Of a DNA stretch of 64,000 nucleotides, positions 2,169 through 63,558 are shown piece after piece (within the stretch, counting starts at the first letter, position 1; every line of letters begins with the position of its first letter). The stretch is from positions 310,001-374,000 of the forward strand of contig NW_003314315.1 of the NCBI RefSeq assembly GCF_000143415.4, in the 5' to 3' direction. The stretch comes from Selaginella moellendorffii. Taxonomy: Eukaryota > Plantae > Lycopodiophyta. The position numbers were made by a program, and so were the translations under genes. A model generated the notes under the pieces. That model saw nothing but the letters and a program-made list of their open reading frames with translations, did not search any database and was not told the DNA's origin.

Positions 2169-6102
<3,934 letters not shown>

Positions 6103-32799: not shown

Positions 32800-35279
32800 T
32801 TCGGGGCTGGGACTGGGGTACATTATGCCACAAGTGACTGCTATCCCTCGCCCAAGTGCCAGCAATAGCATTTTCATTCTGGCAAAAGCAAAGCTCGTAT
32901 TGTGGCTCGCGGCAATGGGGGTCCAAGGTCCTACTGGACGAATCAAAACGAGAACCAGCAAGCAATCACAAGGTTTTGCCATGGATGCCACAGGAAGAAA
33001 TCCCTTCTTCTCAGCCATGGTGGTAAACATGATCTATTCTTTCTGTGACTTTCCTTACCATCTTTTTTCTTTTCTTCTCGGCTAGATCTTGGAGAAGGGT
33101 GGCTATCCCATGATGCAATGGAACCTAGGAAGGTCAGGTTAGTATTTTTTAATTTTTTTTGTAAACCTTTCTTGATCAATCTCAAGACAGAGTCATCTTT
33201 TGCAGCCATCAAGTTTAAGACGGAGTCATCCTGGCAATCAAGTTCAAGGCGTAGTTGAGACCACTCTGGTTCATCAACTATTTCCAGACAACTTCACTTC
33301 TTTAATATATGATTTCAAGCACAGTCTTCATCTACAGCCAATGTGGAGTTCTCCATGGCCACGGCCATCAAGAGTTCTTGATGGGCAAGTGCCATCAAAC
33401 ACAAGGCTGCTGAGTCTGAGTGTTACAAGCACAATAAGGTTGAGAGGTATTTCATATGTCTCAAGGAACGCTCAAAAGAAATACAATAAAATAAAATTAA
33501 GATACTATAAATAGTGTTATTTAGTATTAATTATTAATCAAAATTTATAATTATAAACATGTTTATAGTTTATAAACAAAAGATTAATATTATTGCATAT
33601 CAACCCTCTAAGCCCAATCCTAAATGATTTCCCTCCAAACCCAATTCTCTATAGTCTTCCAGGAAATCTCCATCATTGAAAGGCAATCTTACTTCTTCCA
33701 GCCAGCTTATCAAAATAACAATCAAGAAGTGTTTAACACTTCTTCTAAATAAGCATTTAGAGGGTAGTATAAACAATGGAGGTTTGAAGAGAGAAGGAAA
33801 TTAGTTTCTTCAAGTTAAAACTACTTTAAGACTCAGCTAGTGTAGTTCTTCATAACAGTATAATAGGGAAATATTTTAGTATTTTATATAGTTTGTCGTG
33901 TAACTTTTAGTGTGCACAACCTATAAATTATTTTATCACAGCAACACTAAATCCTTTTGATCTACCAATTCACTAAGACCAACTTCACATGATCACCCAT
34001 GGATCTTGAGTTGCTCAAATTGGAGAAGAGATACAAACCGGTTTCTTATATATAAAAAGATCATTCTTGTTTACTAAGGGCTTGTACATTGTCTATGCTA
34101 GTCAACACACGAAACCAATCCAAATAATTATGGCTGCCATCATCAACAGGTAAAGCTAGATTTAATTATGTTTGTTTATGCATAATTTTTATTCTTACTC
34201 TTTGCACTAGTCCTTATGAAGATGCTACATGAATTAGTTTTGTTAGTGTGGTCAGATGTCAGGAAGAAAGTATCACATTCTTATATTTATTGATATTTAA
34301 ATTATTTGATGAAAGAATAAGGATGAGGGGAAGCAATCCAAAAGTAGAGATTAAAAATTTTGAGTATTTTTTTCCAAGGTATTTGAATTTAAGACTATCT
34401 TAACCATGTTCTATAAGAAAGAATATTTTTTAGAATGAATTAATTAGAATTGATTTCTTAGTATCACTAATCTTGTAGAACAATCACCCAAAATAATAGA
34501 TGGCCTCAAAATAATTTTAAAAACACTTAAAATCAATTATATGCTATCATTAATGGTCTTTTTGTAAGTTATAAATTTTTACTTTTCAATTTGTTAGCTT
34601 ACCTTGTTTATCTGACCACCACTACTTTAACCTTGGTTAAGTTCCCTTGTTAAGATTCTCGTTTATCATACCAACTTTTACCTAGTCCTACTTGGTTTTT
34701 ACTACTCATTATATGAATAATGGACTGGTAGCCATCCATCCAGAAATTCTTAAATTCTCTCATAATCCCCCTCTCCAAGTTAAATTAAATTTAAAGTTTA
34801 ACTATACTCCATGTAGGCGCAAGTAGCTAAACACACCAAACCTCTAAGTTTTTAACCTCTTTTAGTATAATAAAACTTGATCATAGGACCTTCTAAATCC
34901 CAAGCTTTGGATGCATCTTTTGCTTTGGGACCACAGGGTGAAACACCATGGGTTAACAGCCTGATATATGTACTTTTACTCCCTTGCCATTGGCTTACCA
35001 TTATTGCTATTGCCACATTTTGCACAGGATTTCAAGTGAAATGACTTTCCCATACTGCCACTAGTTTTGTCTTGTATACTTGCCTTTCTTATTATGTGGA
35101 CATGTCTTGCTCTCATCCACTAAATTTTAAGCTTTCAATCCCAGAAGGGAAACTAACTGTAATGTTTCAATTCAAGTGAAATGGTGTCCCACTTAAGTAT
35201 TATATAGCTCATTAGTCTTTGCTCCTTCCTAGAGGTTTGAACTTTCCTTTTAGGAGAAAAGTGGGGGACACGAAGAAAA

Positions 35280-35892
35280 TGAATAATTATTGCAACAAGT
35301 GTGGTGAGGAGGGCACTGGAAAGTGGATTATCCTCTACTAAAGAATAAAAATGACCATTTTAACATGGGTGTTGGAACTTTGAGTAGGAAGAAAGTTCAA
35401 CATTAGGACAATCCATGCAAAAAGTATGTATACATGATTGTCTCTACACTTAATTAGATTTAAAGTGATGATCCTATAGACTTGGCTTCGGAACTCTACG
35501 TGATTTAAGTAGAGGGATTATAAGGAGATTATCTAGTGTGTATTTTGGTAGTTTTGACAACTTTGTCTCAAGGAAGTTGGTTAAGGGATTGATTCTATAT
35601 GGAATTTCTAAAGCTACCACCAAGAACCAATGGGATAGTGTAGTGCAGAATTTATTGGTGAAAGTTGGATTATCATGGTTGAGGATTTCTTTCTGTGGAC
35701 TTGTGTCATGTTAACATGATCCTTGGCATGTCATGGCACATGTGTGTTGATCCTGAGATCAATTAAAGCCTAAATTCAATGCATAAAGCTCAAGTATGGT
35801 GGTATATGTGATATTTAGTTTGGAAGCAATGTTCTAAGCTTGACTAAAAGATGTCTTTGAAAAGTGTTCTGCACAATAAAGAGAATGAGTTT

Positions 35893-35968
<76 letters not shown>

Positions 35969-38160
35969 TAGTATTTGTGTGGAGAATCAATGGTGGAGGA
36001 AAAACATAAGGAATTAATATATATGTTCCCAACTGATTTACCACATAAGTTACCACCTTTTTATAGAGTTGAGTTGGGCTAGAGCTAGGTCAAAAGTGAA
36101 TCTATTAACAACTATTTCAGTTAAGTCATGCTGAGGAAGCAGATTAAACATTATGTTATTGAGTTGCTTAAATATAACTTTATCCACCCAAGTAAATCTC
36201 TATTTAGAGCACTAAGACAATTTAATATGAATCTACCATTTGAGCTATCCAAGATTTCTATGCACTTGAGATTAATTGCTAAGGGCTCTAAACCTGGAGA
36301 GGTGTCACTGCATATAACATGTAGCATATAGTAACAACATTTGTTAGTGTTAGCCATTCTTCCATATTAACAATATTTCATGGATTAATTTTGACTCTTT
36401 CAGTAGAGATAATATAATTTAAATACTCATATTTAGATTGCACAAACTCCTCTTAGCATAAAGCTTATGCTTGTGGAGCAACTCCAACACTTTGCATAAA
36501 TGTCATCTATATTACATCATATTTTTACTAAAGATAAGAATATCATCAAAAAGGATTTCCACAAAATCACTCAAACGTGTAAATAATGAGCCTTGTAAAT
36601 TTCACTAATGCATTCATAAGTTCAAATGGCATCATTGTAAATTCAAAATGCTTAAAACTCATAAAGAAAGTTCACTTTGTGATATTTATATAATTCAGAA
36701 TAATTTAATGATAATCACTTTGCAAATCAATCTTGGTAAAGACTTTAACTTCACCAAGTTTATCCAAGATGTTGTCTACATGTAACATGAGAATTTTATC
36801 CTTGACTTTCTTGTTGTTTAAAATATTGCTTTGTTAGAACACTCATTTTGAGTGGAACATATTGCAAGAACAAAGCTTTCAAGTTTCGAAGGCCGTATTC
36901 CAGTTTAATATATAAATTTAGAGATTTAAATTTAATTAGCAAAAAACCCTACTTTTTAGCACCAGGATGAAATTTAAATTGAGGATTCAATCTAGCTCTA
37001 GTTTGTTCTTCATTTTTTTCCCTTTGAAAATGTTAGAACTTAGACCATACTAACACAAATCACCACCCAACCACCCCCTCTACACCACTATTCATAGTTG
37101 TGACCAAGTTCACTCCAATATTGAATTAACCATGGATTTAAAATAAACTGACTAAACTTAACTTAGTTATCATTTAAGCTACATAGATTAATTCCTCCCC
37201 TTAACAAAAATGTTCTTACCTACATGGTGATCAATTACACTTTTTGGGGCTTTGGCTCTATCCCTTCTTCCATAGTTTAAACATCCATGAGGAATTTACT
37301 TTATATACAAGTGGTGTTGTTATACATAACAATCATCCTATTACATAATATTAAACTCAATTGAGTAGCAATGCTCTATATATGAATAAAAGCTTTTAGT
37401 TATTGTTAATATGGTACAAGTGTGGCAATATTATTTATTTGGTGTTGCATTTATAAAAGTCATTAGTGTTTTTATTCACCTTTAAGGAGTTCAACTCTTG
37501 CCATGCACAATAAATGATCAAACTTATAGAGTTTGGTGAATTTCCAATTGAGCACAAGGCTGAATGTATAAATATCGTAGTTGATGTTTTGTCTCACATA
37601 TGCTCTACTATTGAGAAGACTTCTAAGAAAGGATTTGTCATGTTTTAACAAAGGCTGTGATTAAATTTATTAGCATTGTTAGGCAAATTTAGCAATAGGA
37701 TGTTAAGCTACAAAAGCTTAGTGTGCAGATGGAGCTACCCTTCTCATGCCATAATAACTTGCTTTTGTATAATAATTAAGTATATCTTTTTAAAGTTGAC
37801 AAGCTGATAAACCATATCCTCTATTATTATCATGACTACCAAAAGGTTGGTCATTTTGGGGGGAGGAAGACTTACAAGTTGATTAGGCACAAATTTTTTT
37901 AGAAGAAGATGAAAATGACATTCTTAAATATTGCAAGATATGCAAAAATTATCAACAAGTGAAAGTGCAAAAGGAAAAGTTAATGGGGCTTTTAGTGCCA
38001 TTGCTTATCCTGATGAGTATATCTATAAAATTTATTATGCATTTGATAAAAACTCATAAAATAATTATAGATCATTTAACCAAATTTGTAAAGTTGATTC
38101 CTCTTTTCTGTGAAAAAGGTGGAAGAGAGTGTGAATTTAGCTATAGTATATCTTGAGTGT
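35280..38160 (+). mobile_element. Degenerate Ty3/Gypsy retrotransposon relic with inverted RT core
   Basis: Gag knuckle CNKCGEEGH (35291), RT start ELLKYNFIHPSKS (about 36160), RNase H VWQYYLFG and IVVDVLSH, integrase HD..GHFG/GLLVPL/DHLTKF on +; KIDLQSDYH, HFEFTMMPF and IDDI on - at about 36500-36740. Confidence 0.75.
35898..35966. repeat. (TA)n microsatellite
   Basis: About 34 TA units. Confidence 0.98.
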
Positions 38161-39414
38161 GTCTTTCCCTAATTTGGTTTGCCAGAGAAGCTTTGATCAA
38201 GTTAAGTAATAGGGATATTCCTAACATGAAAAATTGGGTGTACTTTCACCCCCCACTTGACAACTTCACTTAATAAGCCACTTCATTGATTTTTCCAAGA
38301 TTTTATAGGGATCAGAGTATTTAGGAGATAACTTATCACTTCTCTCATCTCTTAAGAATATGATGGTTACAATTTTAAGCCACTTTCAAGTTCCTCTTTC
38401 ATTTTTCATCCAATTTTATGGATAAATTCTTTGCCATGCCATCCATCTAAAATTTTCATAAACTATACTCAAAAGCTATTTTTCAATGACAGCATTGCAA
38501 AGTAAAGTGTCATTTTGATGCCACTATGCTAGCTATTATTATAAAAAAACTTTAACTTATCCTATTATCCTTCTTGCCTATAAACAATGCATCTTAGCAT
38601 GTCTTCAATCACGTAGTGAACTCATACAATTTATCTATTTGTGTGAGTTGTGTTTTGATAAGGAATGAATCTTGAGCTTTGCATGTTGATTGGCTGTTGA
38701 TTTATTATTACACTAAGAATATTAAAAAGCATTAAGACTATTATGCATTATCCTCCTTTATAATCTTTGTTGTTGACAAAGAGTATTACTGATAAGCTCT
38801 CTGATCTCAACAACTTTCTCAATTAGATGTTTCAACTGAGAATATTAACCCACAATAGTAATTCTACCTTTTAATTTCTATCTACACTACCAAGACTGAA
38901 AATTAAAAAGACAAGAGTGTAAAAAAGTTTCCATTGGCATCCATTGCATTATGTGCCTCTAGCTGGCCTAAAACCATGTATTATTACCATGACAATAAAC
39001 TTTAATTATAAAGAAAACAATACAAGAATAAAGCATGACTCAAATATAACAAAATAGTGGAAAATACTTAAGAGCTGCTATAAAAAATCTCTTTTTGCAA
39101 GATTGTTGCTACTTTAGTAAGATAGAAGTGGGGCAGCCTAAAGAGCTATCCCAGAAGATGATCCTGTAAATATTACTTGAAAAGTTGAGAAGGTTATTTG
39201 TCTCTCACAAGTGGGAGTGACAACTTGATAATAGATTAAAAATATTAACAATTATGTGTGATAATAAGATTTTATTTTTTGGATAAGATTTTTTTTATTC
39301 CATTAAAATAAATTATAATAAAATCTAGACCATTATAAAAGCACAAAACAAATAATATTCTTAAAGCCCAAAAAAAAAACTGCGGGGTTTCAAAGGCTCC
39401 AAGAATCTGCCGCC

Positions 39415-39695
39415 GGAATGACCAAGTGCTGGTCCTCACAAGCCCAGTGGAAATCGATTCTGTGCATTCCTCTCCTTTTTGAGGCTTGCCTTCTCGCCAG
39501 TGTAAAACGCAACTAAATGAGAACCAAGACGATCTACTTCCAGGGGCAAAACGTTCCCGAGACTATAAGTCTGGCGTTTACATTCTTCTGAGCTTGTCTT
39601 ACTATGTTTCAGCTGCAAAGTCGGAAGATAGCTAGCCGCTGCCTCCGCGGCCACAGTCGGTCTCCTCAGCAGCCATCCGGCCTGATGCCTTGTAA
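39415..39695 (+). pseudogene. 5'-truncated, deleted copy of the DUF1218/Fb34 gene
   Basis: Matches 18900-19335 with many deletions. Confidence 0.9.
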
Positions 39696-39786
39696 GCTCT
39701 CGCTTTTCACGACGACGATGAACTCCGGGACTTCTTCTTTCAACTTCCTGGAAGCGGTCGGCCACACAAAGTAAATTTTTTTTTTC

Positions 39787-40275
39787 TTATGGACTAGACA
39801 TGATAATGTAATCGCCACCGCTTGGACAGGGAGCAGTGATAGACTTACACCCGGCCGCGGTCGGGGAGATGGCGAGGGGGACGCTCCCGCGAGAGAACCT
39901 GATACCATAAAAGTCGGTGTCTCCGGAGTGGCCGGAATTGAGCTGGAACTCGGCTATACTGGATGGAAGAACGTTGGTAATGTAGAAACTTCCCGAGAGC
40001 GCTGCTGTGGATTCAACAGGGACCTGTCCGGTGCCTCCAGCCTCGAGCGTGAAGACGTTCCTCAGCTCCGTGTGGTCTCCTTCCATATGAAGTCGCAGTT
40101 ATTCCTCGTCTGGAATGTGGTCCGGGAAGTCACAGCTGATATCAGAGCAAGACAACGATCGTTAGAACCATCTACAAGTGGAAGGAGAAAAGGCAAAGCC
40201 GGAGAGAGCTATGCAAATAAACCGTGAACTGGGAGCAGTACTAGCAGGAGCGACGCTATGATCTTGTTTATCTTG
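39787..40275 (-). pseudogene. Thaumatin-like pseudogene (copy of 19439-19972)
   Basis: ATG changed to ATA, 19-bp deletion near 40089, loss of the C-terminal Cys segment. Confidence 0.88.
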
Positions 40276-50232: not shown

Positions 50233-52677
50233 TCAACGCTTTGATTCGTAAAGGCTGGCCAAGAGCACGTAGGCTGCTCCCTGGTCGTCACCATCGCCGG
50301 CTTTCATCCACGACTCAAACGCGAGCTTGCCAACCTCGGCGTCTCGGAAGATCCGGCTCGCGCTCAGCACGGTGCTCCAGGTCACGGCATTGGGCTTGTA
50401 AGGCATCGCTTCGACGAGCTTCACGACCTCGTCCAGTCGGTTGGCACGTCCCAGCGAATCGACGATGCAGTGGTAGTGCTTGATCCCTGGAAGCGTCCCA
50501 AACTTTGAGAGCATGGAATGGAAAAAGTACCTGGCAGTCTCGACGAGGCCACCGCGGCTGCAAGCGATGAGCAGGCACACGAAAGTCACGGCGTTTGGGC
50601 GGAGTCCCTCGTCGAGCAGCGCGTGGAAGAGCTCCAGCACCTCTCTCGTGTTGGCCTGGCGGCTATGCCCGGCTACCAGCGTGTTCCAAGTCACTAAGTT
50701 CCTGGTGGTGGATGAAGAAGTGGCAGCGAAGACACACCCAGCGTCCTCCATGCTTCCACACTTAGCGTAGGCGTCGAGCAAGCTATTCGTGAGAAGCACC
50801 ACCTCCTTCTCCTCGGACGACGACAAGAGCCCACGCCGGTTGATCTCTCCATGGACGAGCTTTGTCCTCTCCAGCGCAACCAAGCTTCCGCAAGCTTTGA
50901 GTGCCGCGGCAAAGCTAAGAACGTCTGGAGCGCAGTCCATCCGAGCGAAGAGCTCCAGAGCCACTTCTCCCTCCTCGCTCTCCGCGTAGCCGAGTATCAG
51001 AGCGTTCCAGAACACCACGTCCCGGCAGTGGATCATCGCCTCGAAGACTCGGCGAGCATGGGACAGGCTTCCACACTTGGAGTACAAGTCGACGAGCGTG
51101 CCGGCCACGAATCTGTCCGAGTAGAAGCCACTTTGCTCAGCCTGTTCGTGCAAAGCTATGCCTCTTCCCAAGCACCTGGCCTTGACAAGCTTCCCGGATA
51201 CTTGCTTCGCGTTCTCCATCGCTGCCAGGCCAGTCCAGGCCTTGAGTGCCGCCACAAAGCTTCGTGAGTCCGGTGGCAAGCCTTGTTGGAGCATTCTCGC
51301 AAAAACTTCCAGAGCGGCACCTGGTTCTTCGTTTTGCGCGTAGCCGAGCATAAGTCCGTCCCACGAAACAACCGTGTGCACTGGCATCCTTGCGAAGGCC
51401 CTGGAAGCGTCAGCCATGCTTCCACACTCTCCATACAAGTCCACCAGCGAGCTTCCCACGCAGACGTCGAGATCACACCCAAACTTTCGAGCCTGCGCGT
51501 GAACAGCCATGCCTTTCTCCAAGCTTTCCAGCTTCACGGGCCTGCCGCAAACTTCCACCCCGGCCTCCTTCGTCGCCATGCAAAGGCAAGCTTTCAAAGC
51601 AGCGACGAACGTCCCAGCAGTGAGCTCTTCCCAGCCTCGTCGCAGCGTCGCCATTCTCTTCTCGAACAGCTCCAGAGTAACTTCCGGTCTCCCGTTTCTC
51701 GAGTAGCCCAGCATGAGAGCGTTCCACGACACGGAAGTGTGTCGAGGCATCCTGTCAAACACCCGCTGGGCGCTCACCACGCTTCCACACTTCGCGTACA
51801 TGTCCACCAGCGTGTTTGCGATGTAGATATCGTCCTCGAATCCGAGCTCCACGGCTTGGCAGTGAAGGACCCTTCCTCTCTCCAAGATCTCGGCCTTGGT
51901 AACTTTCTTCTTCTCTGCCAAGCTCGCGCAAGCCTTTACTGCCGCCACCAGAGTTCGAGCATTCGGCTCGCATCCTTCCACTCCCATGCACGACACCAGC
52001 TCGAGCGCCACCTCTTCCTCACCATTGTCTACATATCCCAGCACCAGAGCCGTCCAGGAAACCACGCTCCTACAAACCATCCGGTCGAAAACCATCCGGG
52101 CATCGACCAAGCTCCCACACTTCACGTAAGCATCGAGGATGGAATTCGCCACAAAGATGTCCGAGTCACAGCTCTTCTCCACTGCCTGGAAGTGGACTCC
52201 CATTGCTCGCACCAGCGCTCCAAGTTTCACAAGCCTTCCATCGATGATCTCGCCTTCCTCGGCAGCGGCCAAGTTTGAGCAGGCCTTGGCGGCTGCCACA
52301 AACGTCCACGAGTTTGGAGCACAGCCTTCTTCTCGTTCCATCCTTTCCAGCGCCTCGAGAGCTTTGATCTCTTCCCTGTTCTCCGCGTAGCCGAGCATCA
52401 AGGCCGTCCAGGACACCACATTGCGACTGGCCATCCCATCGAAGACCCTCCGCGCATCCGTCAAGCTCCCACACTTGGCGAACATCGAGATCAGTGAATT
52501 TGCCACGGAAATCCGCGAGATCTCCCCTCCTTCCACCGCATTGCTGTGGAGCTTCCATCCTCTCTGCAAATCCCTACTTCTAGCGCACTCCTGGATCGCT
52601 GCGATGACGCTGTGCGATCGAGTTCCCGATTCCTCATCGCAGTTTCGCAAAGATTTCCTCGCGGAGCAGCGCCGCAA
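50233..52677 (-). CDS. PLS-class PPR protein with E domain and elongated L motifs
   Basis: Repeated DMYAKCGS..A.RVFD.M..VVSW.ALMLGY; ends HYHCIVDSLGR..PNAVTWSTVL..AAYVLLASLY; no in-frame ATG at the ORF start. Confidence 0.9.
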   Translation of the reverse strand: MRRCSARKSLRNCDEESGTRSHSVIAAIQECARSRDLQRGWKLHSNAVEGGEISRISVANSLISMFAKCGSLTDARRVFDGMASRNVVSWTALMLGYAENREEIKALEALERMEREEGCAPNSWTFVAAAKACSNLAAAEEGEIIDGRLVKLGALVRAMGVHFQAVEKSCDSDIFVANSILDAYVKCGSLVDARMVFDRMVCRSVVSWTALVLGYVDNGEEEVALELVSCMGVEGCEPNARTLVAAVKACASLAEKKKVTKAEILERGRVLHCQAVELGFEDDIYIANTLVDMYAKCGSVVSAQRVFDRMPRHTSVSWNALMLGYSRNGRPEVTLELFEKRMATLRRGWEELTAGTFVAALKACLCMATKEAGVEVCGRPVKLESLEKGMAVHAQARKFGCDLDVCVGSSLVDLYGECGSMADASRAFARMPVHTVVSWDGLMLGYAQNEEPGAALEVFARMLQQGLPPDSRSFVAALKAWTGLAAMENAKQVSGKLVKARCLGRGIALHEQAEQSGFYSDRFVAGTLVDLYSKCGSLSHARRVFEAMIHCRDVVFWNALILGYAESEEGEVALELFARMDCAPDVLSFAAALKACGSLVALERTKLVHGEINRRGLLSSSEEKEVVLLTNSLLDAYAKCGSMEDAGCVFAATSSSTTRNLVTWNTLVAGHSRQANTREVLELFHALLDEGLRPNAVTFVCLLIACSRGGLVETARYFFHSMLSKFGTLPGIKHYHCIVDSLGRANRLDEVVKLVEAMPYKPNAVTWSTVLSASRIFRDAEVGKLAFESWMKAGDGDDQGAAYVLLASLYESKR

Positions 52678-52946: not shown

Positions 52947-55116
52947 ATGGCGGATGAGGCAAAAGCGCGCGGCAATGCCGCTTTCTCGGCAGGGAATTTC
53001 GAAGAGGCGATCAAGCATTTCTCGGACGCGGTTGCTCTAGCTGGGACGAACCATGTTTTCTACTCCAATCGCTCCGCATGCTACGCATCGCTCCACAAGT
53101 ACCAGGAGGCTCTCGAGGATGCAAAGAAGACTGTGGAGCTCAAGCCGGATTGGCCGAAAGGTTACAGCAGGCTTGGCGCTGCCTATGTCGGCCTCAAGAA
53201 ATTCCCCGACGCGGTCTCGGCCTACAAGAAGGGACTCGAGTATGATCCTAGCAACGAGGCTCTCAAGTCGGGCTTGGCGGACGCACAGGAATCCATGTCA
53301 GGGGCAGGGCAGCCATCGCCTTTCGGGAATTTGTTCCAGGGTCCAGATGTGTGGGCGAAGCTGCAGCAGGATCCCAGGACCAAAGCGTTTCTCACGCAGC
53401 CGGATTTCTTGAAGATGATGCAAGACCTCCAGAGAAATCCCAACGCGCTCAACCTTTACATGAACGATCCTAGGATGATGCAAGTTCTAGGAGTTCTACT
53501 TGGTGTGAACATCCACACGCCTTCCAAGGAGGAAATGGAGAAGGGTGTTTTTGAGGAGGAACAGGAAGCATCGTCTCAGCCATCCGAGACTAGTAGGCGT
53601 GAGACAAGCAAGCCTGCTACTCCTGCTCCAGAGCCGGTCCCGGAACCGATGGAGATACCGGATGAAGATAGAGAGAAAAAGGAAAAGAAAGCGGCGGCTA
53701 TAAAAGCGAAGGAGGCCGGGAATGAGGCGTATAAGAAGAAGGATTTTGAGTCGGCATTGGCGAATTACTCCAAGGCAATCGAGCTCGACGACGAGGATAT
53801 CTCCTACCTCACAAACAGAGCGGCGGTCTACCTTGAAATTGGAAAGGTACTGTTTCTTATTTGTTATGACCACCTTCTGTGGTTGTTTCTCACTTTCGAT
53901 GGTTTCTTACGGCAAACAGTACGAAGAATGTATCAAAGATTGCGATCAGGCAGTCGAGCGTGGAAGGGAATTGCATTCAGACTACAAGATGGTAGCAAAG
54001 GCGCTGACGCGGAAGGGATCGGCTTATGTCAAGCTGGCTAAGTGTGCCAAGGACTACGAGCCTGCTATCGAGATCTTCAACAAGGCTTTGACAGAACACC
54101 GTAATCCGGACACTTTGAAAAAACTCAATGATGCAGAGAAAGTCAAAAAGGAACTTGAGCAAAAGGAGTACTTTGATCCCAAGATTGCCGACGAGGAGAG
54201 AGAAAAAGGTACCTTAAGTCATGAATTGTGCTTGACTTCGTTCTTTTCTTCCTTTTAACTGTTAGGCAACGATTATTTCAAGGAGCAAAAGTACCCCGAG
54301 GCAGTGAAGCATTACTCGGAGGCTCTTAGGAGGAATCCGAATGATGTGAAGGTATCACGCGTGATTTTGTGTGTGATAGCCACTGAGCTTGCCCTCTCTT
54401 TGCATGCAGGCTTACAGCAACAGAGCAGCAAGCTACACGAAACTCGGTGCCTTCCCCGAAGGGTTGAAGGATGCTAACAAGTGCTTGGAGATCGATCCTT
54501 CTTTTATCAAGGGATACTCGCGCAAGGGGGCAATCCAATTCTTCATGAAGGAGTATGACAAAGCATTGGAAACTTACCAGGTAAAACTTGAAGGTAGAAT
54601 GAAAAGACCTCACTTTTAACGTGTGTTCTCGTTTGCTCGATAGACCGGGTTGAAGTACGATGAACACAACCAGGAAATGATGGATGGGATCCAAAGGTAA
54701 TTCACCGAAACTTTTCTTTTAATGACAAGACTCTCCCTTTTTTCCCAGATGCGTCGAGCAGATCAACAAGACGAACAGGGGAGACATTAGCGCCGAAGAG
54801 CTCAAAGAGCGCCAGGTTAGCTTTTCTTGTAGTGAGTGCTTCGAGTGTGTTCTTATTTCTCTTTCCATCGTTCAGGCCAAGGCTATGCAAGACCCCGAGA
54901 TCCAGGGCATTCTCTCGGATCCAGTAATGCGACAGGTATGAGATCGATTTTTCTCGATTCTTCGTCTCAACATGGAATGGATTTTCTGGTTTGGTGTTGT
55001 AGGTATTGATCGATTTCCAGGAGAGTCCAAAGTCAGCTCAAGACCACATGAAGAACCCCATGATCATGGCAAAGATCCAGAAGCTTGTGGCCGCTGGCAT
55101 TGTCCAAGTGAGATAG
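52947..55116 (+). CDS. HOP: Hsp70-Hsp90 organising protein (STI1/HOP)
   Basis: MADEAKARGNAAFSAG, TPR1-DP1-TPR2A-TPR2B-DP2 layout, ends KIQKLVAAGIVQVR*. Confidence 0.97.
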
Positions 55117-55918: not shown

Positions 55919-57916
55919 ATGGCAACGAGCGTCAAGAACGAGCTCCTGGCGGCGTCCCCCCCTCCATTCCACTGGCCGGCGTCGATCTTCTCACCTCCTC
56001 CTCCTCAATCGCAGCATTCTCTGGCGATGCGCGAAGATTGTGGCAGCGGCGTGTGGGATCACTGCTCCGCGGCGGCTGGATCGGGCGCTCTCTCGCCGCT
56101 GAGCGAGTATCTCATGCAGCCGGACGAGGAAATCTTGTCCATGTCCTCGCTCGATGCCGCTAGCAGCAGCTTCCAGTCGGGATTGACGACGGACGAGGAG
56201 GAGGAGCAAGGGTTCTTTGCCGGATTATCGGCGAATTCTTGCTCCTCGGCCTCCTCCTCGGCCTCCAACACGTCCCCCTCCTCGGCCTCTCACCACTACC
56301 AGCAATTCGACCCCAACAGCCCGCCCGGCAACGTCCTCCTCCACTCGGTGGTGCGCTCCAAAATCCACGAGATCAACAGCAGGCTCTTCGACGACGAGGA
56401 CGACGGCATCGATCAGCTCATCACGACCGACGGCGTCGTCATCGATTCCTCGCCCTCGCTGGAGCAGCAGCACGGCTACCAGCCCGTGGCGATGCCGCCG
56501 CCAGCGCCGATTCTCCCATTCCGCTCACACCAGGACTCGTTTGGGACGATACGATCGTTCGATTTCCAGCAGCCCATCCAGCCGGCCTTCGCGAGCTGGA
56601 CGCACGGTACGTGGCACGTCCACCCCACGGTGCCGCCGCCGCTGCCGCCGGCGGTACGCGGGCCGGCGTGGCAGCACCGCGGAGGTATACCGCACGGTAC
56701 GGTGCCTGTGCCGCCGGCGCCGGCAAGCACCGTGGCGGTACAGGGCGGTATACCGCACGACGGCTCCCAGGACCCACAGGTGCTACTCGTCCAGCTGCTA
56801 GTGATGTGCGCCCACGCGGTGGCGGAGAAAAACGCGAGCATCGCCCAGATGATATTGGCGCGTCTCAGGCAGCACACTGGGCCGGAGGGGACGCCCATGG
56901 AGAGGCTGGCGTCCTACTTCACCGAGGCGCTTGCCGCGCGGATCGATCAGTCCACGGGCTCTGCGCTCTTCAAGGGCCTGCTCAGCGACAAGCTGCTCGA
57001 GTCGGATGGATCCACGCAGGCCAGCATGCTCGAGGCGTTCAGCACCTTCTACGACTACCTCCCCATCGGCAAATTCGACCACCTCACCATGAACCAGGTA
57101 ATCCTCGACGCCGTGGAGCGCGAGCGCGCCATCCACATCCTCGACCTCCAGCTCTGGTTTGGCACCCAATGGCCGGCGCTGCTGCAAGCTCTCGCAACTC
57201 GCCCCGGAGGACCACCTAGAGTGAGGATCACGGCAGTGGGCTCTTCCGCGGACGATCTAGCAGCCACTGGCGACAAGCTCCACGAGTGTGCCAAGACGCT
57301 GCGCGTCCATCTCGAGTACAAGGCCTTGCTACTGCCCAAGGCGGACAAGTTCCATGCCGGGCTCGTCAACCTCCATCCCGGCGAGGCCTTCATCGTCAAC
57401 AGCCTCAGCCAGTTCCACTACCTCCTGCAGCCCTCCACTTCCGACTCGGACACCTCCTTCGGCGGATTCATGGCTCACATCCGAGCTCTCCGGCCCAAGG
57501 TGCTCGTCATGGCGGAGAACGACGCCAGCCACAACAGCTCCGACTTTCTCAAGCGATTCGGGGAGTGTCTCAAGTACTACTCGGCGGTGTTCGACGCCAT
57601 GGCGACGTGCGCGAGCTCGCCCAGCGGGAGGTTGAAGATGGAGAGGCTCTTTGCGGCGCCAAAGATCCGGAACATCATCGCGTGCGAGGGGCCTAACCGG
57701 GTGGAGCGTCACGAGAGCATGGCGGACTGGAGCAAGCGGCTGGAGGTGGCGGGGTTTCGGCCATCGCCGCTCAGCCAGAGGGCCGTCAACCAGGCCAAGC
57801 TGCTACTCCGCCTCTACTACACGAATGGCTACACGCTCCACAGCGAGAGAGGCTCGCTGGTTCTCGGGTGGAGGAATTTGCCGCTCAACACGGTATCGGC
57901 CTGGAGAGTCGCGTGA
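55919..57916 (+). CDS. GRAS family transcription factor, intronless
   Basis: LHRI LVQLLVMCAHAV, MERLASYFTEAL, VHIID variant IHILD, QWPALLQALATRPGGPP, ERHE, C-terminal VSAW. Confidence 0.96.
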   Translation: MATSVKNELLAASPPPFHWPASIFSPPPPQSQHSLAMREDCGSGVWDHCSAAAGSGALSPLSEYLMQPDEEILSMSSLDAASSSFQSGLTTDEEEEQGFFAGLSANSCSSASSSASNTSPSSASHHYQQFDPNSPPGNVLLHSVVRSKIHEINSRLFDDEDDGIDQLITTDGVVIDSSPSLEQQHGYQPVAMPPPAPILPFRSHQDSFGTIRSFDFQQPIQPAFASWTHGTWHVHPTVPPPLPPAVRGPAWQHRGGIPHGTVPVPPAPASTVAVQGGIPHDGSQDPQVLLVQLLVMCAHAVAEKNASIAQMILARLRQHTGPEGTPMERLASYFTEALAARIDQSTGSALFKGLLSDKLLESDGSTQASMLEAFSTFYDYLPIGKFDHLTMNQVILDAVERERAIHILDLQLWFGTQWPALLQALATRPGGPPRVRITAVGSSADDLAATGDKLHECAKTLRVHLEYKALLLPKADKFHAGLVNLHPGEAFIVNSLSQFHYLLQPSTSDSDTSFGGFMAHIRALRPKVLVMAENDASHNSSDFLKRFGECLKYYSAVFDAMATCASSPSGRLKMERLFAAPKIRNIIACEGPNRVERHESMADWSKRLEVAGFRPSPLSQRAVNQAKLLLRLYYTNGYTLHSERGSLVLGWRNLPLNTVSAWRVA

Positions 57917-58970: not shown

Positions 58971-61376
58971 TTGATTAAGCCGAATATTCTCGCTCTGGCA
59001 AGACATGGCCTTGGCCTCGTTGCCGATTTCGCCAACGCGATCAAGAGCTGCAAGGATCTCCACAAATGCCAGCTTCTCCACAGCAAGATCCTCTCCGGCC
59101 CCTGCAATCACGACCGATACCTCTCCAATCTCCTCATCGACACGTATGGGAAGCTGGGCAGCATCGAGAGCGCTCGCGCCGTCTTCCACGCGATGGGCGA
59201 TCCCAATCACTTCTCCTGGAACATCTTACTGGGCGCATTCGCCCAGAATGCCCACATCGACGACGCGAAGACCACTTTCGATCGCATGCCGCAGTGGGAT
59301 CTCGTCTCGTGGAACGCGCTAATCTCCGCATTTGCCCATCACGGGCATTCGGAGGAGGCCAAGGCGATGTTCCTGGCGATGGAGAATCGCGACGTCGTAT
59401 CGTGGAGCTCCGTGATCAAAGCCTACGCGCAGTCGGGACTCGTCGATCAGGCCTCGCAAGTCATGGATCGCATTCCCAAGTGGGACGTCCAATCCATCAC
59501 CGGCATGGTCGCAGCATTTGCCCAGAACGGGCACCTTGACGCTGCGAGCGCGATGTTCGATCGAATGGAAGAACGCAACGTCGTCGTGTGGACAGCGCTC
59601 ATCACCGGCCTCTCGCTGAGTTACCAGATCGAAGAGGCGGAGACAATCTTTAGATTGATCCCCGGGAGGGACGTGATCGCGTGGAACGCGATGATCACGG
59701 CGTATAGCCAAAATGGCGACCCCCACACGGCCAAGCTCCTCTTCGACGTAATGCCAGAGCGCAACGTGGTGACGTGGACGACCCTGATTGTCGTGCTGGC
59801 AGACCACGGTGACCTGTGCGACGGACGCGGTACCTACCTGCGGATGCCGCACGTCAACGTAGTAGCGTCCAATGCGATGATCCAGGCCAACGCCCACCAC
59901 GGTGAGCACGACGCGGCAAAAGGAATCTTTGACGGGATGCGAGAGTGGGACTTTGTCTCCTGGAACTGTCTCCTCACGCTCTACACGGAGGCAGGGAACC
60001 TCGCTGACGTGGAGGGCGTCTTCCACGCCATGCCCGACCGGGATGACGTGTCGCGCAACGCAATGCTTGCGGCGTATGTCCGCTGGGGCCACCTGGACAG
60101 CGCCACGTGCCTGTTTGACGCGATGCCACGTCGCGGGATCGTGTGCTGGAACACCATGGTCACCGCGCACGCCAATGCGGGCGTCACCGCGCGGGCGAAG
60201 TGGCTTTACGACACCATGCCGCAGTGGAATATCCTTTCGGTCACCGCGATGCTCACCGCGTACTCTAACCGGGCGTTTGTAGAAGATGCCGAGGATCTCT
60301 TCATGCGGCTGCCGCAGCGCACCGCGGTAGCGTGCAACATTATGATCATGATGTACAGCGAACAGGAGGATCTAGAATCAGCTGTCGGCATATTTTCTAA
60401 GATGCCACAGCACGATCTTATCTCGTGGAACGCGCTTGTTTCAGCATATGCCGCAAATGGGCATCCGCTGCAAGCGAGAGTTTCTCTCGATTCCATGCCC
60501 AAGAGAGACGTGGTATCGTGGACGACAGTCGTGGCTGGATACACCCAAACTGGTGATATCGACAAGGCCATCTCCACCATGAATCGGATGCCAATGTGGG
60601 ATCTCGTGACCTGGAACGTGATGATCTCGGCGTACGCAGGGATTGGAAACTGTGTCATAGCAAAGAAAATGTTTGATGACAAGCAGCAGCGGAATCTCAT
60701 CTCCTGGAATGGACTGATCGCGGCCTACGCCCAAACCGGAAACTTGGCACTCGCGGTAGCCAGCTTCCACAAGATGCCCGAATGGGACTCCATCTCGTGG
60801 ATCGGGCTCATCGTGGCCTACGCCCAATGCGGCCACGTATCCGACGCCTGTGCGATGTTCGAGGATATCCCTTCCCGCGGGACGCTGGCGTTCTCCGCGA
60901 TCCTGGGGGCATATGCCCACACTGGGCACCACAGCGAGGCCGGGGAGGTCTTCCGGGCAATGCAGCTCGAGGGCGTACGTCCAACCAAGGTTTCGTACAT
61001 GGCGCTTCTCACAGGTTTCAGCTATGGCGGGATGCTGGACGAGTGCCGAGAGGCCTTCGTAGGGATGCTGTCGGCAGGGATCTCTCCGGCGATCCAGCAC
61101 TTTCGCAGCGTTGTCGACGTTATCGGGCGAGCAAGGGACCCGGGGGATGCGGAAGAACTGATCAGAACGATGCCGTACGTGGCGGACTCGGTGGTGTGGA
61201 CGTCGCTGCTCGGGGCGTGTCGCATGCACGGGGATCTGGAGAGAGCGGCGCTGGCGGCAAGAAAGGTGACGGAGCTTGAGCCCGACATCTCGGTTCCGTA
61301 TGTGCTGCTGGCCGAGATGATCAAGAGCGAGGGTGGCAGCGACAGTGACGAGCTCGCGAAAGGTATAGATTCATGA
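58971..61376 (+). CDS. PLS-class PPR protein (S-motif rich) with E domain
   Basis: About 20 tandem ~31-aa motifs; VVWTSLLGACRMHGD..EPDISVPYVLL; true start unresolved. Confidence 0.9.
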   Translation: MIKPNILALARHGLGLVADFANAIKSCKDLHKCQLLHSKILSGPCNHDRYLSNLLIDTYGKLGSIESARAVFHAMGDPNHFSWNILLGAFAQNAHIDDAKTTFDRMPQWDLVSWNALISAFAHHGHSEEAKAMFLAMENRDVVSWSSVIKAYAQSGLVDQASQVMDRIPKWDVQSITGMVAAFAQNGHLDAASAMFDRMEERNVVVWTALITGLSLSYQIEEAETIFRLIPGRDVIAWNAMITAYSQNGDPHTAKLLFDVMPERNVVTWTTLIVVLADHGDLCDGRGTYLRMPHVNVVASNAMIQANAHHGEHDAAKGIFDGMREWDFVSWNCLLTLYTEAGNLADVEGVFHAMPDRDDVSRNAMLAAYVRWGHLDSATCLFDAMPRRGIVCWNTMVTAHANAGVTARAKWLYDTMPQWNILSVTAMLTAYSNRAFVEDAEDLFMRLPQRTAVACNIMIMMYSEQEDLESAVGIFSKMPQHDLISWNALVSAYAANGHPLQARVSLDSMPKRDVVSWTTVVAGYTQTGDIDKAISTMNRMPMWDLVTWNVMISAYAGIGNCVIAKKMFDDKQQRNLISWNGLIAAYAQTGNLALAVASFHKMPEWDSISWIGLIVAYAQCGHVSDACAMFEDIPSRGTLAFSAILGAYAHTGHHSEAGEVFRAMQLEGVRPTKVSYMALLTGFSYGGMLDECREAFVGMLSAGISPAIQHFRSVVDVIGRARDPGDAEELIRTMPYVADSVVWTSLLGACRMHGDLERAALAARKVTELEPDISVPYVLLAEMIKSEGGSDSDELAKGIDS

Positions 61377-61581
61377 ACTCGCTTTCGTGCTTTCTTGCTT
61401 CCTTGTGTCCAAATGGTGGACTCCCAAGCTTGGAGCTTCGGTAAAGACAAAAGAGATCCCGAGACAAACCACGTCAAGTCAAGGGTGGGCGATTTTAGGA
61501 AATCGAGACGGACAGTGATCGCAATCTAGCTTGGCCAGCAATGGCAATAGCAAACGACAGTGATATCTAGCTGGGCCAGAA

Positions 61582-63366
61582 ATGGCAATAGCACGAAGAT
61601 CTCCACTGCTGCTAGCTTTGCTCTTGGCGATTTCCAGCTCCTCGCTTCTTCACGGCCATCACATCTCTAGCTGCCGTTGCCTCCACGGCGATCCAAATTG
61701 CTGGCCCCAGGATCGCGACTGGAAGATCTTCAATGCCTCAATCCAAGGCCGGCTCATCGCGGTCAAGCCCCCGGCATGGCCTTGCCACGATCCCCACTAC
61801 GACCATCATCTCTGCGAGCTCGCCACCGAGAATTGGAGCGATCCCGCCTGGAGATCCGACCAGCCGGGAGCGATGATGGCCGATAACTGGGAGATGGACG
61901 ACGCCCGCAACGAGAGCTGCTCCGTCCGCGACCCGAGGAGCTCGCGTTGCGAGCAAGGGTCAGTGCCGGTCTATGCGGTCAATGTTAGTCAAGTCTTCCA
62001 GGTGGAGCTTGCGGTGGCTTTCGCTAGCAAGCACAACCTTCTCCTTGTGGTAAAGAACACTGGTCACGACTACCTTGGAAGAAGCACTGCGAGGGGATCG
62101 CTCAGCATTTGGATGCATCACTTGCGGGAGCTGCGCTTTCACGGTGATCTTGGCTGTGATCAAGCAGAGCATTGCGACGATCGAGGGCTGGATCCAGCGG
62201 CGTATGTGACGATTGGAGCTGGAGTGACTTGGAACCAGCTCTACGAGGCCGCGCTGGAGCACAGGCACGATATTGTGGGAGCTTCGTGCCCGTGGGTTGG
62301 AGCTGCCGGTGGATTCGCACAAGGTGGCGGGCACAGCTTGCTCTCTCCAGTCTTTGGCCTCGCGGCGGACAATGTTGTGGAGCTCCAAGTTGTGACGGCT
62401 GATGGGAAGCGAAAGGTGGCGAGCGAGTGGCAAAACGAGGATCTCTTCTGGGCGCTCAGAGGTGGCGGCGGAGGTACGTTTGGAGTCGTGGTTTCACTCA
62501 CTTACAGAACGTATCCGGCTCTCGAGAACGCAATCTTTGCGAGCGTGAATGTGACTGCCAAAGATCGCCCCAGTTTTGAGACGCTTCTCGAGGAGTTTGC
62601 ACGGATGAATCCGGAGCTTTGGTCTGATGGCTGGTCTGGTTTCTTCAATGTCGGCAACTTTTCACTCTCCTTGAGATACGTGCTTCCAAACAAGACCCTG
62701 GCATTCGCTTGCTCCAGCTTGAATTTTCTCCTCGGCCTCCAGCACAACCGGATTCAAACCCACTATTCTCTCAAATCCTACGCATCCTTCTATGAGCTCA
62801 TTCAGCAAGCACTGTGCGGAAGCGATCCAAGCTGTCCCAACGTTGGCGGGCCGGCAGGGAATCCAGTTCTTCCAGCTTCACGTCTTATCCCAACTCAAGC
62901 TCTAAACTCTTTCCCAACCAAAGTCTCTAGAGCACTCGCGAAGATAGCTCTCGACTTCCAAGTTCCAATCGTGGGTGCCCTCGTCGCTGGTGGCCAAGTC
63001 TCTGTGCCTCGCGACAGCGCCGTGAATCCCGCCTGGAGAGATTCGCTGTGGCTCGTCATTGTTTCGGTGAGCGCCCCAAGATCACAGAGAAAAGAGGCAG
63101 CGACGCTGGTCTCGAGGGCCAACAAGGTGTTGATCGATATCACACCCGGATCTGGGAGCTACATGAACGAGGCCGACTACAACGAGCCACACTTCCAGAG
63201 ATCGTTCTTTGGAAGTCACTACAAGCGGCTCTACGAGATCAAGCAGCGCGTGGATCCGGGAGGGCTCTTTGTGTGCCATCACTGCGTAGGGAGCGAGGAC
63301 TGGACCCAGGATCTTAGATGCAAAACTCAGTCAAACAAGTCAATCAATGTCAACAAGATTGACTAA
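61582..63366 (+). CDS. Secreted FAD-linked oxidase, berberine-bridge-enzyme-like (fungal-type architecture)
   Basis: Signal peptide; VKNTGHDYLGRS, GGGHSLLSPVFGLAADN, DLFWALRGGGGGTFGVV, YMNEAD..YKRLYEIKQRVDPGGLF. Confidence 0.93.
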   Translation: MAIARRSPLLLALLLAISSSSLLHGHHISSCRCLHGDPNCWPQDRDWKIFNASIQGRLIAVKPPAWPCHDPHYDHHLCELATENWSDPAWRSDQPGAMMADNWEMDDARNESCSVRDPRSSRCEQGSVPVYAVNVSQVFQVELAVAFASKHNLLLVVKNTGHDYLGRSTARGSLSIWMHHLRELRFHGDLGCDQAEHCDDRGLDPAAYVTIGAGVTWNQLYEAALEHRHDIVGASCPWVGAAGGFAQGGGHSLLSPVFGLAADNVVELQVVTADGKRKVASEWQNEDLFWALRGGGGGTFGVVVSLTYRTYPALENAIFASVNVTAKDRPSFETLLEEFARMNPELWSDGWSGFFNVGNFSLSLRYVLPNKTLAFACSSLNFLLGLQHNRIQTHYSLKSYASFYELIQQALCGSDPSCPNVGGPAGNPVLPASRLIPTQALNSFPTKVSRALAKIALDFQVPIVGALVAGGQVSVPRDSAVNPAWRDSLWLVIVSVSAPRSQRKEAATLVSRANKVLIDITPGSGSYMNEADYNEPHFQRSFFGSHYKRLYEIKQRVDPGGLFVCHHCVGSEDWTQDLRCKTQSNKSINVNKID

Positions 63367-63389
63367 AAGTGACGTAATGCAACCATGAT

Positions 63390-63460
63390 GCGCAGCTGGT
63401 GTAGTGGTATCATAGTACCCTCCCACGGTACTGACCGGGGTTCGATTCCCCGGCTGCGCA
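63390..63460 (+). tRNA. tRNA-Gly(CCC)
   Basis: Acceptor GCGCAGC/GCTGCGC, anticodon arm GTACC-CTCCCAC-GGTAC, T loop GGTTCGATTCC, followed by a T-run. Confidence 0.96.
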
Positions 63461-63558
63461 ATTTTAATAAACACGTGGCTTTTGCCACGTGGATAAGTTT
63501 TTTTTTTTTGGACATGTCGCCACGTGTTTTACTTCCAAAGAATGTAGGGTTCTTGAGG

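What the first reader, a model, noticed from the sequence alone, without database searches (positions are those of the whole stretch)
61582..63366. Fungal-type BBE-like oxidase in a plant genome: horizontal-transfer candidate
Seen: intronless secreted 594-aa protein with an N-terminal CRC..GD..CWP...W..FN.SI.GRLI module, C.QGSVPVYAVNV, KNTGHDYLGRS and a C-terminal LF.C..CVGSE.W. Established: angiosperm BBE-like enzymes have RSGGHDYEG and end FRNEQSIP, whereas these motifs typify fungal secondary-metabolism FAD oxidases (ZEB1 / isoamyl-alcohol-oxidase type). His (GHDY) and Cys (ASCPWVG) suggest bicovalent FAD. It is flanked by plant genes, so contamination is unlikely. The substrate is unknown.
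Basis: partly seen in the sequence, partly recalled or inferred. Interest (0 to 1): 0.7.

Follow-up and report, generated by a model that had tools for sequence, protein, structure and literature searches.

The report
Fungal-type flavin oxidase gene in Selaginella
An intact, intron-free gene in the spikemoss Selaginella moellendorffii encodes a secreted flavin oxidase of a type typical of fungi. It belongs to a many-copy family that among plants was found only in Selaginella and ferns, so it most likely entered early vascular plants from a fungus, although the trees do not prove this.

Summary
It carries Pfam FAD_binding_4 and BBE domains.

- **Closest structures:** the protein matches the fungal oxidase MtVAO615 (PDB 6F72) over its full length at E 1.4e-84, with a model TM-score of 0.83/0.90. 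Canonical plant BBE-like enzymes match only the flavin domain, at about 1e-15 to 1e-19.
- **Cofactor residues:** His162, Cys236, Val239 and Glu530 align with MtVAO615's flavin-linking, oxygen-gate and catalytic residues. I predict a secreted oxidase with doubly linked FAD that releases H2O2. The substrate is unknown.
- **Host:** the genome is Selaginella moellendorffii. PPR, GRAS and HOP genes flank the gene, and the second haplotype carries it in the same order, so contamination is excluded.
- **Distribution:** word-index and exhaustive searches place only Selaginella (about 17 copies), Adiantum, Ceratopteris and three unnamed fern-like transcripts in one plant clade (support 96-98).
- **Tree:** the plant clade sits with fungi and bdelloid rotifers, apart from bacteria (support 100). 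The backbone is unresolved, and an AU test does not reject plants as sister to all fungi (p 0.30).

Ancient fungus-to-plant transfer is therefore the most economical reading, not a proven one. This scan had already reported four paralogues on other pieces of this genome. Expression could not be tested.

The parts
61582..63366 (+). Complete intronless coding sequence (594 codons plus stop) of a VAO/BBE-like flavoprotein oxidase of the fungal MtVAO615 type
   Evidence: ORF. Pfam FAD_binding_4 and BBE. Full-length match to PDB 6F72 at E 1.4e-84. AlphaFold model with pLDDT 92 and pTM 0.90, whose best fold match is 6f72_A at TM 0.83/0.90.
61582..61656 (+). Probable secretion signal (aa 1-25)
   Evidence: Basic residues, then a Leu/Ala-rich core, then a Ser-rich stretch. 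This region has low pLDDT in the model. It aligns with the region that is a cleaved 26-residue signal in MtVAO615 (PMC6017366). Judged by inspection; no predictor was run.
61672..61974 (+). Cys-rich N-terminal extension (aa 31-131; Cys31, 33, 40, 68, 78, 113, 123) that marks this subfamily and is absent from canonical BBE-like enzymes
   Evidence: Conserved Cys columns C33, C40, C68, C78, C113 and C123 in the 16- and 91-sequence alignments. Canonical BBE-like chains align only from about aa 113-140 onward.
61975..62412 (+). FAD_binding_4 domain (aa 132-277)
   Evidence: Pfam PF01565, E 6.9e-16.
62065..62067 (+). His162 codon, predicted 8-alpha-N1-histidyl link to FAD
   Evidence: Aligns with His157 of MtVAO615. 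Invariant in all 110 aligned family members that have a residue there. The codon was checked.
62287..62289 (+). Cys236 codon, predicted 6-S-cysteinyl link to FAD (the second covalent bond)
   Evidence: Aligns with Cys222 of MtVAO615. Kept in only 5 of the Selaginella copies, in no fern or rotifer copy, and in all 17 bacterial relatives. The codon was checked.
62296..62298 (+). Val239 codon, a small 'oxygen gate' residue
   Evidence: Aligns with Val225 of MtVAO615, which the authors link to oxygen reactivity (PMC6017366). Nearly invariant in the family.
63157..63282 (+). BBE domain (aa 526-567), including Glu530 (63169-63171) in the YxNE motif
   Evidence: Pfam PF08031, E 1.4e-09. Glu530 aligns with Glu519 of MtVAO615, which replaces the usual catalytic Tyr (PMC6017366). 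PMC8752850 reports a Glu (Glu538) as the general acid in the relative AspoA; I did not align AspoA, so its equivalence to Glu530 is assumed.

Best explanation
This is a working gene of Selaginella moellendorffii for a secreted, glycosylated flavoprotein oxidase of the fungal MtVAO615 type.

Proposed mechanism:
- FAD is tied to the protein twice, through His162 (8-alpha) and Cys236 (C6). In characterised relatives this double link gives a very high redox potential.
- A hydride is taken from a hydroxylated, probably bulky and hydrophobic, small molecule. The likely reaction is a secondary alcohol oxidised to a ketone, with Glu530 as the acid/base in place of the usual Tyr.
- The reduced flavin is re-oxidised by O2 past the small gate residue Val239, releasing H2O2 outside the cell.

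Proposed history:
- The gene belongs to a family of about 17 copies in Selaginella, shared among plants only with ferns.
- The family most likely descends from one fungal gene captured by an early vascular plant. It was then duplicated, lost the second flavin link in most copies, and disappeared from seed plants.

What is shown: gene integrity, family membership, conserved cofactor residues, plant genomic context, and the lycophyte-plus-fern clade.
What is inferred: secretion, covalent flavinylation, oxidase chemistry, substrate class, and the direction and date of the transfer.
For: Protein and fold:
- Intact ORF with FAD_binding_4 and BBE domains.
- Best solved relatives are 6F72 (E 1.4e-84, full length) and 6F74 (E 9.5e-66). 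Canonical plant BBE-likes reach only 1e-15 to 1e-19 over the FAD domain.
- The model has pLDDT 92. TM is 0.83/0.90 to 6f72 and 0.82/0.85 to 6f74, and about 0.63 to AtBBE15, EcBBE and PpBBE1.
- His162, Cys236, Val239, His251 and Glu530 equal MtVAO615 His157, Cys222, Val225, His237 and Glu519.
- MtVAO615 has been shown to carry bicovalent FAD, to have a redox potential of about +120 to +160 mV, and to react fast with O2 (PMC6017366).
- Eight N-glycosylation sequons and 16 Cys.

Genomic context:
- Plant neighbours.
- The second haplotype (GL377612.1) has the same gene order and a 98.8% identical intact copy.

Family and phylogeny:
- Plant members occur only in Selaginella, Adiantum, Ceratopteris and three fern-like transcripts, by the word search and by the exhaustive profile search followed by a tree.
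- The plant clade has support 96-98. Eukaryotes are separated from bacteria at 100.
- A Selaginella paralogue and an Adiantum copy are also intronless.
Against: - Tree topology does not establish a fungal donor. The backbone support is 88-89, and AU tests do not reject plants as sister to all fungi plus rotifers (p 0.30) or monophyletic fungi (p 0.27) (fast searches, LG+F+G4 only).
- The two haplotypes differ by 13 non-synonymous and 8 synonymous changes. pN/pS is about 0.5 and not significantly below 1 (Fisher p 0.12), so constraint on this particular copy is not demonstrated.
- No substrate is known even for MtVAO615.
- Pocket residues Tyr449, Cys450 and Asp451 of MtVAO615 are Val, Gly and Ala here.
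- Many lycophyte, fern, bryophyte and gymnosperm genomes may not be in the searched collections with names.
Confidence: 0.65

Rival explanations
1. Vertical descent. The family is an old eukaryotic gene that plants and fungi both inherited, and that was lost in all algae, bryophytes, seed plants and nearly all other eukaryotes.
For: The AU test does not reject plants as sister to all fungal and rotifer sequences (p 0.30). Within plants the pattern looks vertical, because clade B holds Selaginella and ferns as neighbours.
Against: No green-lineage member outside lycophytes and ferns turned up. This holds for a plant-profile word search and for the best 150 of 2434 clusters in the exhaustive search, placed on a tree. 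The other non-fungal eukaryotes found are bdelloid rotifers, which by general knowledge are known recipients of foreign genes. Many independent losses would be required.
Confidence: 0.12
2. Direct acquisition from bacteria, independent of the fungal genes.
For: Full-length bacterial relatives exist in many phyla at 28-34% identity. All of them keep the Cys that this copy also keeps. The gene has no introns.
Against: The 17 sampled bacterial sequences form one clade separated from all eukaryotic ones with support 100 in both trees. Fungal proteins are closer, at 36-45% identity.
Confidence: 0.05
3. This particular copy is drifting towards a pseudogene (intact frame, but no longer needed), as has happened to the copy next to it.
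For: pN/pS between haplotypes is about 0.5 and not significantly below 1, with radical changes such as W283C, W347S and C377R. The window copy has the longest terminal branch within clade A (0.7). A decayed inverted copy lies next to it in the other haplotype. Expression is unverified.
Against: Both haplotypes keep the full 590+ codon frame and every cofactor residue. The coding sequence is less diverged (1.2%) than the surrounding 6.4 kb (2.3%). The allele has a RefSeq model.
Confidence: 0.12
4. Contaminating fungal DNA in the assembly.
For: None beyond the fungal-type sequence.
Against: The gene lies inside a 1.39-Mb scaffold between PPR, GRAS and HOP genes. The same arrangement is found on the second haplotype scaffold. 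Its composition is host-like.
Confidence: 0.01

Closest known systems
MtVAO615 of Myceliophthora thermophila (PDB 6F72; Ferrari et al. 2018, PMC6017366)
   Same: Full-length homology (E 1.4e-84, residues 10-578 against 6-567). Same fold (TM 0.83/0.90). Both have an N-terminal secretion signal and a Cys-rich extension. The His and Cys for bicovalent FAD, the small Val oxygen gate, and the Glu in place of the catalytic Tyr are all conserved.
   Different: Only about 32% identity in the structural alignment. Pocket residues Tyr449, Cys450 and Asp451 are Val, Gly and Ala here. The host is a plant. MtVAO615 itself has no known substrate.
MtVAO713 (PDB 6F74) and its relatives: the Hypomyces alcohol oxidase of hypothemycin synthesis and ecdysteroid-22-oxidase (as described in PMC6017366)
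   Same: Same subfamily ('clade II' of that paper); E 9.5e-66 and TM 0.82/0.85. The strand motif around aa 462-472 (LVAGGQV) resembles MtVAO713 more than MtVAO615. These relatives oxidise secondary alcohols on bulky lipophilic molecules, which is the basis of my substrate-class guess.
   Different: MtVAO713 has Ser where this protein has Cys236, so it binds FAD once, not twice. Most other plant copies resemble MtVAO713 in this respect.
Canonical plant BBE-like enzymes (EcBBE, AtBBE15, PpBBE1, THCA synthase, Phl p 4)
   Same: Same VAO/PCMH superfamily and the same two Pfam domains. Many are also secreted and bicovalently flavinylated.
   Different: They match only the flavin domain, at E 1e-15 to 1e-19, with TM about 0.56-0.64 by query. 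They lack the Cys-rich N-terminal extension and have a different catalytic residue set (PMC6017366).
AspoA of cytochalasin synthesis (PMC8752850)
   Same: 35% identical to MtVAO615 according to that paper. It uses a conserved Glu (Glu538) as general acid, which shows that a Glu of this kind can be catalytic in the subfamily.
   Different: AspoA is reported to isomerise a double bond without needing flavin redox chemistry. It was not compared directly here because no sequence reference was available.

Membership tests
VAO/PCMH flavoproteins, BBE-like group (Pfam FAD_binding_4 + BBE) | Both Pfam domains score above their curated cut-offs, in the usual order | tested here: met
   PF01565 scored 58.7 bits (cut-off 26.4) and PF08031 scored 38.3 bits (cut-off 20.6).
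VAO/PCMH flavoproteins, BBE-like group (Pfam FAD_binding_4 + BBE) | Two-domain VAO fold | tested here: met
   Model pLDDT 92. At least 321 PDB chains matched at E <= 0.001, and all 50 shown are VAO/BBE-type.
Fungal MtVAO615/MtVAO713 subfamily ('clade II', isoamyl-alcohol-oxidase-like) | Full-length homology including the extra N-terminal, Cys-rich ~100 residues | tested here: met
   One alignment covers aa 10-578 against 6F72. Conserved Cys33, 40, 68, 78, 113 and 123.
Fungal MtVAO615/MtVAO713 subfamily ('clade II', isoamyl-alcohol-oxidase-like) | Glu instead of the catalytic Tyr of other BBE-like oxidases | tested here: met
   Glu530 aligns with Glu519. It is present in every aligned member that has a residue at that position.
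Fungal MtVAO615/MtVAO713 subfamily ('clade II', isoamyl-alcohol-oxidase-like) | His for the 8-alpha link, and (MtVAO615 type only) Cys for the 6-S link | tested here: met
   His162 equals His157 and Cys236 equals Cys222.
Fungal MtVAO615/MtVAO713 subfamily ('clade II', isoamyl-alcohol-oxidase-like) | Covalently bound FAD and fast re-oxidation by O2, measured on the protein | not testable with these tools
   This needs purified protein. Only the residues can be read from the sequence.
Canonical plant BBE-like enzymes | Closest relatives are plant BBE-like proteins, with homology over the full length | tested here: not met
   Plant BBE-likes match only about aa 113-323, at E 1e-15 to 1e-19, against 1e-84 for the fungal enzyme.
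Horizontally acquired gene (fungus to plant) | Physically integrated in the host genome | tested here: met
   Flanked by PPR, GRAS and HOP genes, and syntenic on both haplotypes.
Horizontally acquired gene (fungus to plant) | Absent from the recipient's other relatives | tested here: met
   Only Selaginella, Adiantum, Ceratopteris and three fern-like transcripts fall in the plant clade. This holds within the limits of the collections and of the top 150 of 2434 clusters.
Horizontally acquired gene (fungus to plant) | Recipient sequences nested within donor diversity, with statistical support | tested here: inconclusive
   With a bacterial root, the plants sit inside fungi in the best trees, but support is 88-89. 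The alternative is not rejected (AU p 0.30).
Horizontally acquired gene (fungus to plant) | Transcribed in the recipient | not tested

The most novel reading that the evidence does not exclude
One gene from an early-diverging fungus that still bound FAD twice entered the common ancestor of lycophytes and ferns more than 400 million years ago. It was lost in seed plants and diversified in Selaginella and ferns into an extracellular oxidase toolkit for a lineage-specific chemistry. An example would be oxidation of hydroxylated sterol- or polyketide-like defence compounds, as the fungal relative ecdysteroid-22-oxidase does. The Cys-bearing copies, such as this one, would keep the ancestral high-potential form.
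Probability: 0.15. Interest if true: 0.65.

Novelty: new member of a known kind. Interest (0 to 1): 0.4.

Why it matters
Transfers from fungi to early land plants are known but few, and most documented ones are transporters or single enzymes. Here a whole family of secreted, high-potential flavin oxidases (about 17 copies in Selaginella) is shared only with ferns and has no characterised member in any plant. Its best-studied fungal relative still has no known substrate. If the history holds, it marks a gain at the base of vascular plants followed by a loss in seed plants. It would also point to an unexplored extracellular oxidative chemistry in lycophytes and ferns. For this particular copy, the added value is that it is one of the few that keep the second flavin-binding Cys. 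That makes it a good candidate for biochemical work.

Tried and rejected
- **Mixture-model trees:** the 110-row mixture-model tree and treekit's AU test under the mixture model did not finish within the time limits. A full IQ-TREE search also timed out. I fell back on a 58-row PMSF 'quick' tree, a FastTree of 110 and 250 rows, and an AU test on fast-search trees under LG+F+G4. The AU result is therefore weaker than it could be.
- **Literature:** ten full-text searches found no paper that describes this family in plants. The key survey of plant horizontal transfers (Ma et al. 2022, cited from my own knowledge) is not in the library, so prior publication cannot be excluded.
- **Unnamed transcripts:** searching for the run accessions of the three unnamed fern-like transcripts gave nothing, so their species remain unknown.
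- **Contamination:** rejected.
- **Recent Selaginella-specific transfer:** rejected, because ferns share the family.
- **Membership of the canonical plant BBE-like family:** rejected.
- **Gene cluster:** no sign of a biosynthetic gene cluster around the gene.

Full report
**The observation**

One search lists a single uninterrupted ORF at 61582..63366 on the + strand, 594 codons from an ATG.

- Pfam finds FAD_binding_4 (aa 132-277) and BBE (aa 526-567), both well above their curated cut-offs.
- The first 25 residues have the look of a secretion signal. They align with the part of the fungal enzyme MtVAO615 that its authors report as a cleaved 26-residue signal (PMC6017366). This was judged by eye, not by a predictor.
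- The protein has eight N-glycosylation sequons and 16 cysteines, which fits a secreted glycoprotein.

**What kind of enzyme it is**

- Against all solved structures, the best sequence matches are two oxidases of the fungus Myceliophthora thermophila. MtVAO615 (6F72) matches at E 1.4e-84 in one alignment over aa 10-578. MtVAO713 (6F74) matches at E 9.5e-66.
- Canonical plant BBE-like enzymes (Phl p 4, THCA synthase, EcBBE, AtBBE15, PpBBE1) match only the flavin domain, at about 1e-15 to 1e-19.
- An AlphaFold model built on a 91-sequence alignment is confident (pLDDT 92, pTM 0.90). Foldseek ranks 6f72 first (TM 0.83/0.90) and 6f74 next (0.82/0.85). There is then a clear gap to the canonical BBE-like folds, at about 0.56-0.65 by query.

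In the alignment to MtVAO615:

- His162 corresponds to His157 and Cys236 to Cys222. These are the two residues shown crystallographically to bind FAD covalently.
- Val239 corresponds to Val225, the small 'oxygen gate'.
- His251 corresponds to His237.
- Glu530 corresponds to Glu519, which replaces the catalytic Tyr of other BBE-like oxidases (PMC6017366).
- In the relative AspoA, a conserved Glu was shown to be the general acid (PMC8752850).
- Pocket residues Tyr449, Cys450 and Asp451 of MtVAO615 are Val, Gly and Ala here. That strand resembles MtVAO713 more.

MtVAO615 has no known substrate. MtVAO713 and its relatives oxidise secondary alcohols on bulky lipophilic molecules (PMC6017366). That is the basis of my guess at the substrate class, and it is inference only.

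**Whose genome, and is the gene really in it**

- The protein's 90% cluster holds entries named Selaginella moellendorffii (EFJ17712.1, XP_002981011.2) from a second scaffold. The window is therefore S. moellendorffii.
- Within 12 kb upstream lie two PPR genes, a HOP/STI1 gene and a GRAS gene.
- The second haplotype scaffold (GL377612.1, locus L083) has the same order, GRAS then PPR then oxidase. It is 97.7% identical over 6.4 kb and 98.8% identical in the coding sequence.
- GC and GC3 of the oxidase lie within the range of its neighbours.

Contamination is excluded.

**Constraint on this copy**

- The two haplotype copies are both intact. They differ by 8 synonymous and 13 non-synonymous changes plus a 6-base indel near the C-terminus.
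- pN/pS is about 0.5 and is not significantly below 1 (Fisher p 0.12).
- Constraint on this copy is therefore suggested, not shown.
- Expression could not be tested.

**Relatives**

- The word-index search with the protein found about 15 further S. moellendorffii proteins at 38-53% identity. After them came early-diverging fungi (Calcarisporiella, Basidiobolus, Mortierellaceae, Umbelopsis, chytrids), then Ascomycota and Basidiomycota, bdelloid rotifers, and the ferns Adiantum and Ceratopteris.
- A profile of the plant members alone brought up no other plant.
- Because the transfer claim rests on the absence of relatives, I also ran the exhaustive profile search. It found 2434 clusters at E <= 1e-30.
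- I placed the best 150 representatives on a 250-row tree. Only one more fell in the plant clade, and it is another S. moellendorffii paralogue.
- Three unnamed Logan transcripts (runs SRR2103735 and SRR7121612) sit inside the fern subclades. Their species could not be identified.
- Bacterial genomes hold full-length relatives at 28-34% identity in many phyla.

**Trees**

- In a FastTree of 110 rows and an IQ-TREE PMSF tree of 58 rows, the bacteria form one clade (support 100). The plant sequences form one clade (98 and 96), and so do the rotifers (99-100).
- The plant clade splits into clade A and clade B. Clade A is Selaginella only, holds the window copy, and has support 98-99. Clade B contains Selaginella genes beside the fern genes.
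- With the bacteria as root, a chytrid sequence and then the rotifers branch first. The plants fall into a polytomy with Calcarisporiella, Basidiobolus, Mortierellaceae and a Dikarya/chytrid/Umbelopsis group. These backbone branches have only 88-89 support.
- An AU test rejects none of the alternatives. Plants as sister to all fungi plus rotifers gives p 0.30, fungi as one clade gives p 0.27, and all Selaginella copies as one clade gives p 0.15. The test used LG+F+G4 on fast-search trees because the mixture-model test did not finish.

The topology is thus compatible with a fungal donor but does not prove one.

**History**

The most economical reading is this. The family is old and widespread in bacteria and throughout fungi. 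One fungal-type copy entered an early vascular plant, or a lycophyte or fern lineage with later plant-to-plant spread. It then duplicated repeatedly and is missing from seed plants.

- Vertical descent from a common ancestor of plants and fungi would need losses in every alga, bryophyte, seed plant and nearly every other eukaryote sampled.
- Direct bacterial origin is disfavoured by the split between bacteria and eukaryotes, which has support 100.
- A Selaginella paralogue (GL377565.1) and an Adiantum copy are also intronless.

**A feature specific to this copy**

The second flavin-binding Cys (Cys236) is kept in only five Selaginella copies: P0001, P0004, P0006, P0007 and P0009, all early-branching members of clade A. 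No fern or rotifer copy keeps it, and only 1 of the 40 named fungal sequences first sampled does. All 17 bacterial relatives keep it, as do two early-diverging fungi (a chytrid, Geranomyces, and Sorochytrium) and about 20 of the 50% representatives.

The doubly linked state therefore looks ancestral and repeatedly lost. The plant ancestor probably still had it, and this gene is one of the few plant copies predicted to keep the high-potential cofactor.

**Prior knowledge**

- The gene is annotated in NCBI: the allele carries the automatic name 'uncharacterized FAD-linked oxidoreductase ARB_02478'.
- Ten full-text searches found no paper that describes this family in plants. The main survey of plant horizontal transfers is not in the library, so prior publication cannot be excluded.
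- This scan has already reported the same family four times on other pieces of this genome. My independent searches and trees agree with those notes.

**Verdict**

The enzyme type is correctly identified. Ancient fungus-to-plant transfer is likely but unproven. This is a new member of a known kind of event and of a known enzyme subfamily, and it is of moderate interest.

Noticed in passing
window 63389-63461 (+): A tRNA-Gly (anticodon CCC) gene lies 22 bases after the oxidase stop codon. A run of 12 T follows at about 63500-63511, which looks like a polymerase III terminator.
   Followed up: partly
L083 6517-7707 (- strand), other haplotype scaffold GL377612.1; by offset this would start about 180 bases past the window's end: A decayed, inverted, tail-to-tail copy of this same oxidase gene. 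It is 80-94% identical in DNA patches, has stops and frameshifts, and has lost the stretch holding the NTGH flavin-binding motif. The oxidase therefore underwent a local inverted duplication, and one arm died.
   Followed up: partly
window 61524-61593 (+): A roughly 29-base direct repeat (period 41) duplicates the start region. The upstream copy carries its own ATG (61541), which opens a 9-codon upstream ORF (MAIANDSDI, then stop) just before the real start at 61582.
   Followed up: no
L083 4001-7069: The RefSeq model of the allele (XP_002981011.2, 641 aa) spans 3069 bases and overlaps the upstream PPR gene model (617-4211). Its extra 47 residues probably come from a doubtful 5' exon; the continuous 594-codon ORF is the simpler model.
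   Followed up: no
window 50233-52677 (-) and 58971-61376 (+): Two long intronless PPR genes (about 813 and 801 aa) flank a HOP/STI1 gene (52947-54041) and a GRAS gene (55919-57916). These are ordinary plant genes, useful as provenance markers.
   Followed up: yes
window 22000-28000 and 34000-40000: Two stretches of markedly lower G+C (0.31-0.38, against 0.45-0.63 elsewhere). The first has strong positive GC skew. They were not examined and may be repeats or transposons.
   Followed up: no
I did not examine it.
   Followed up: no
P0064 (S. moellendorffii), P0063/P0072 (Adiantum), P0121-P0124 (fungi): Some family members are annotated as fusions. One Selaginella model also carries a SWEET/MtN3 domain (PF03083). 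The Adiantum models are 771-872 aa. Several fungal proteins of about 1140-1185 aa seem to hold two oxidase units in tandem. These could be gene-model errors or real fusions.
   Followed up: no
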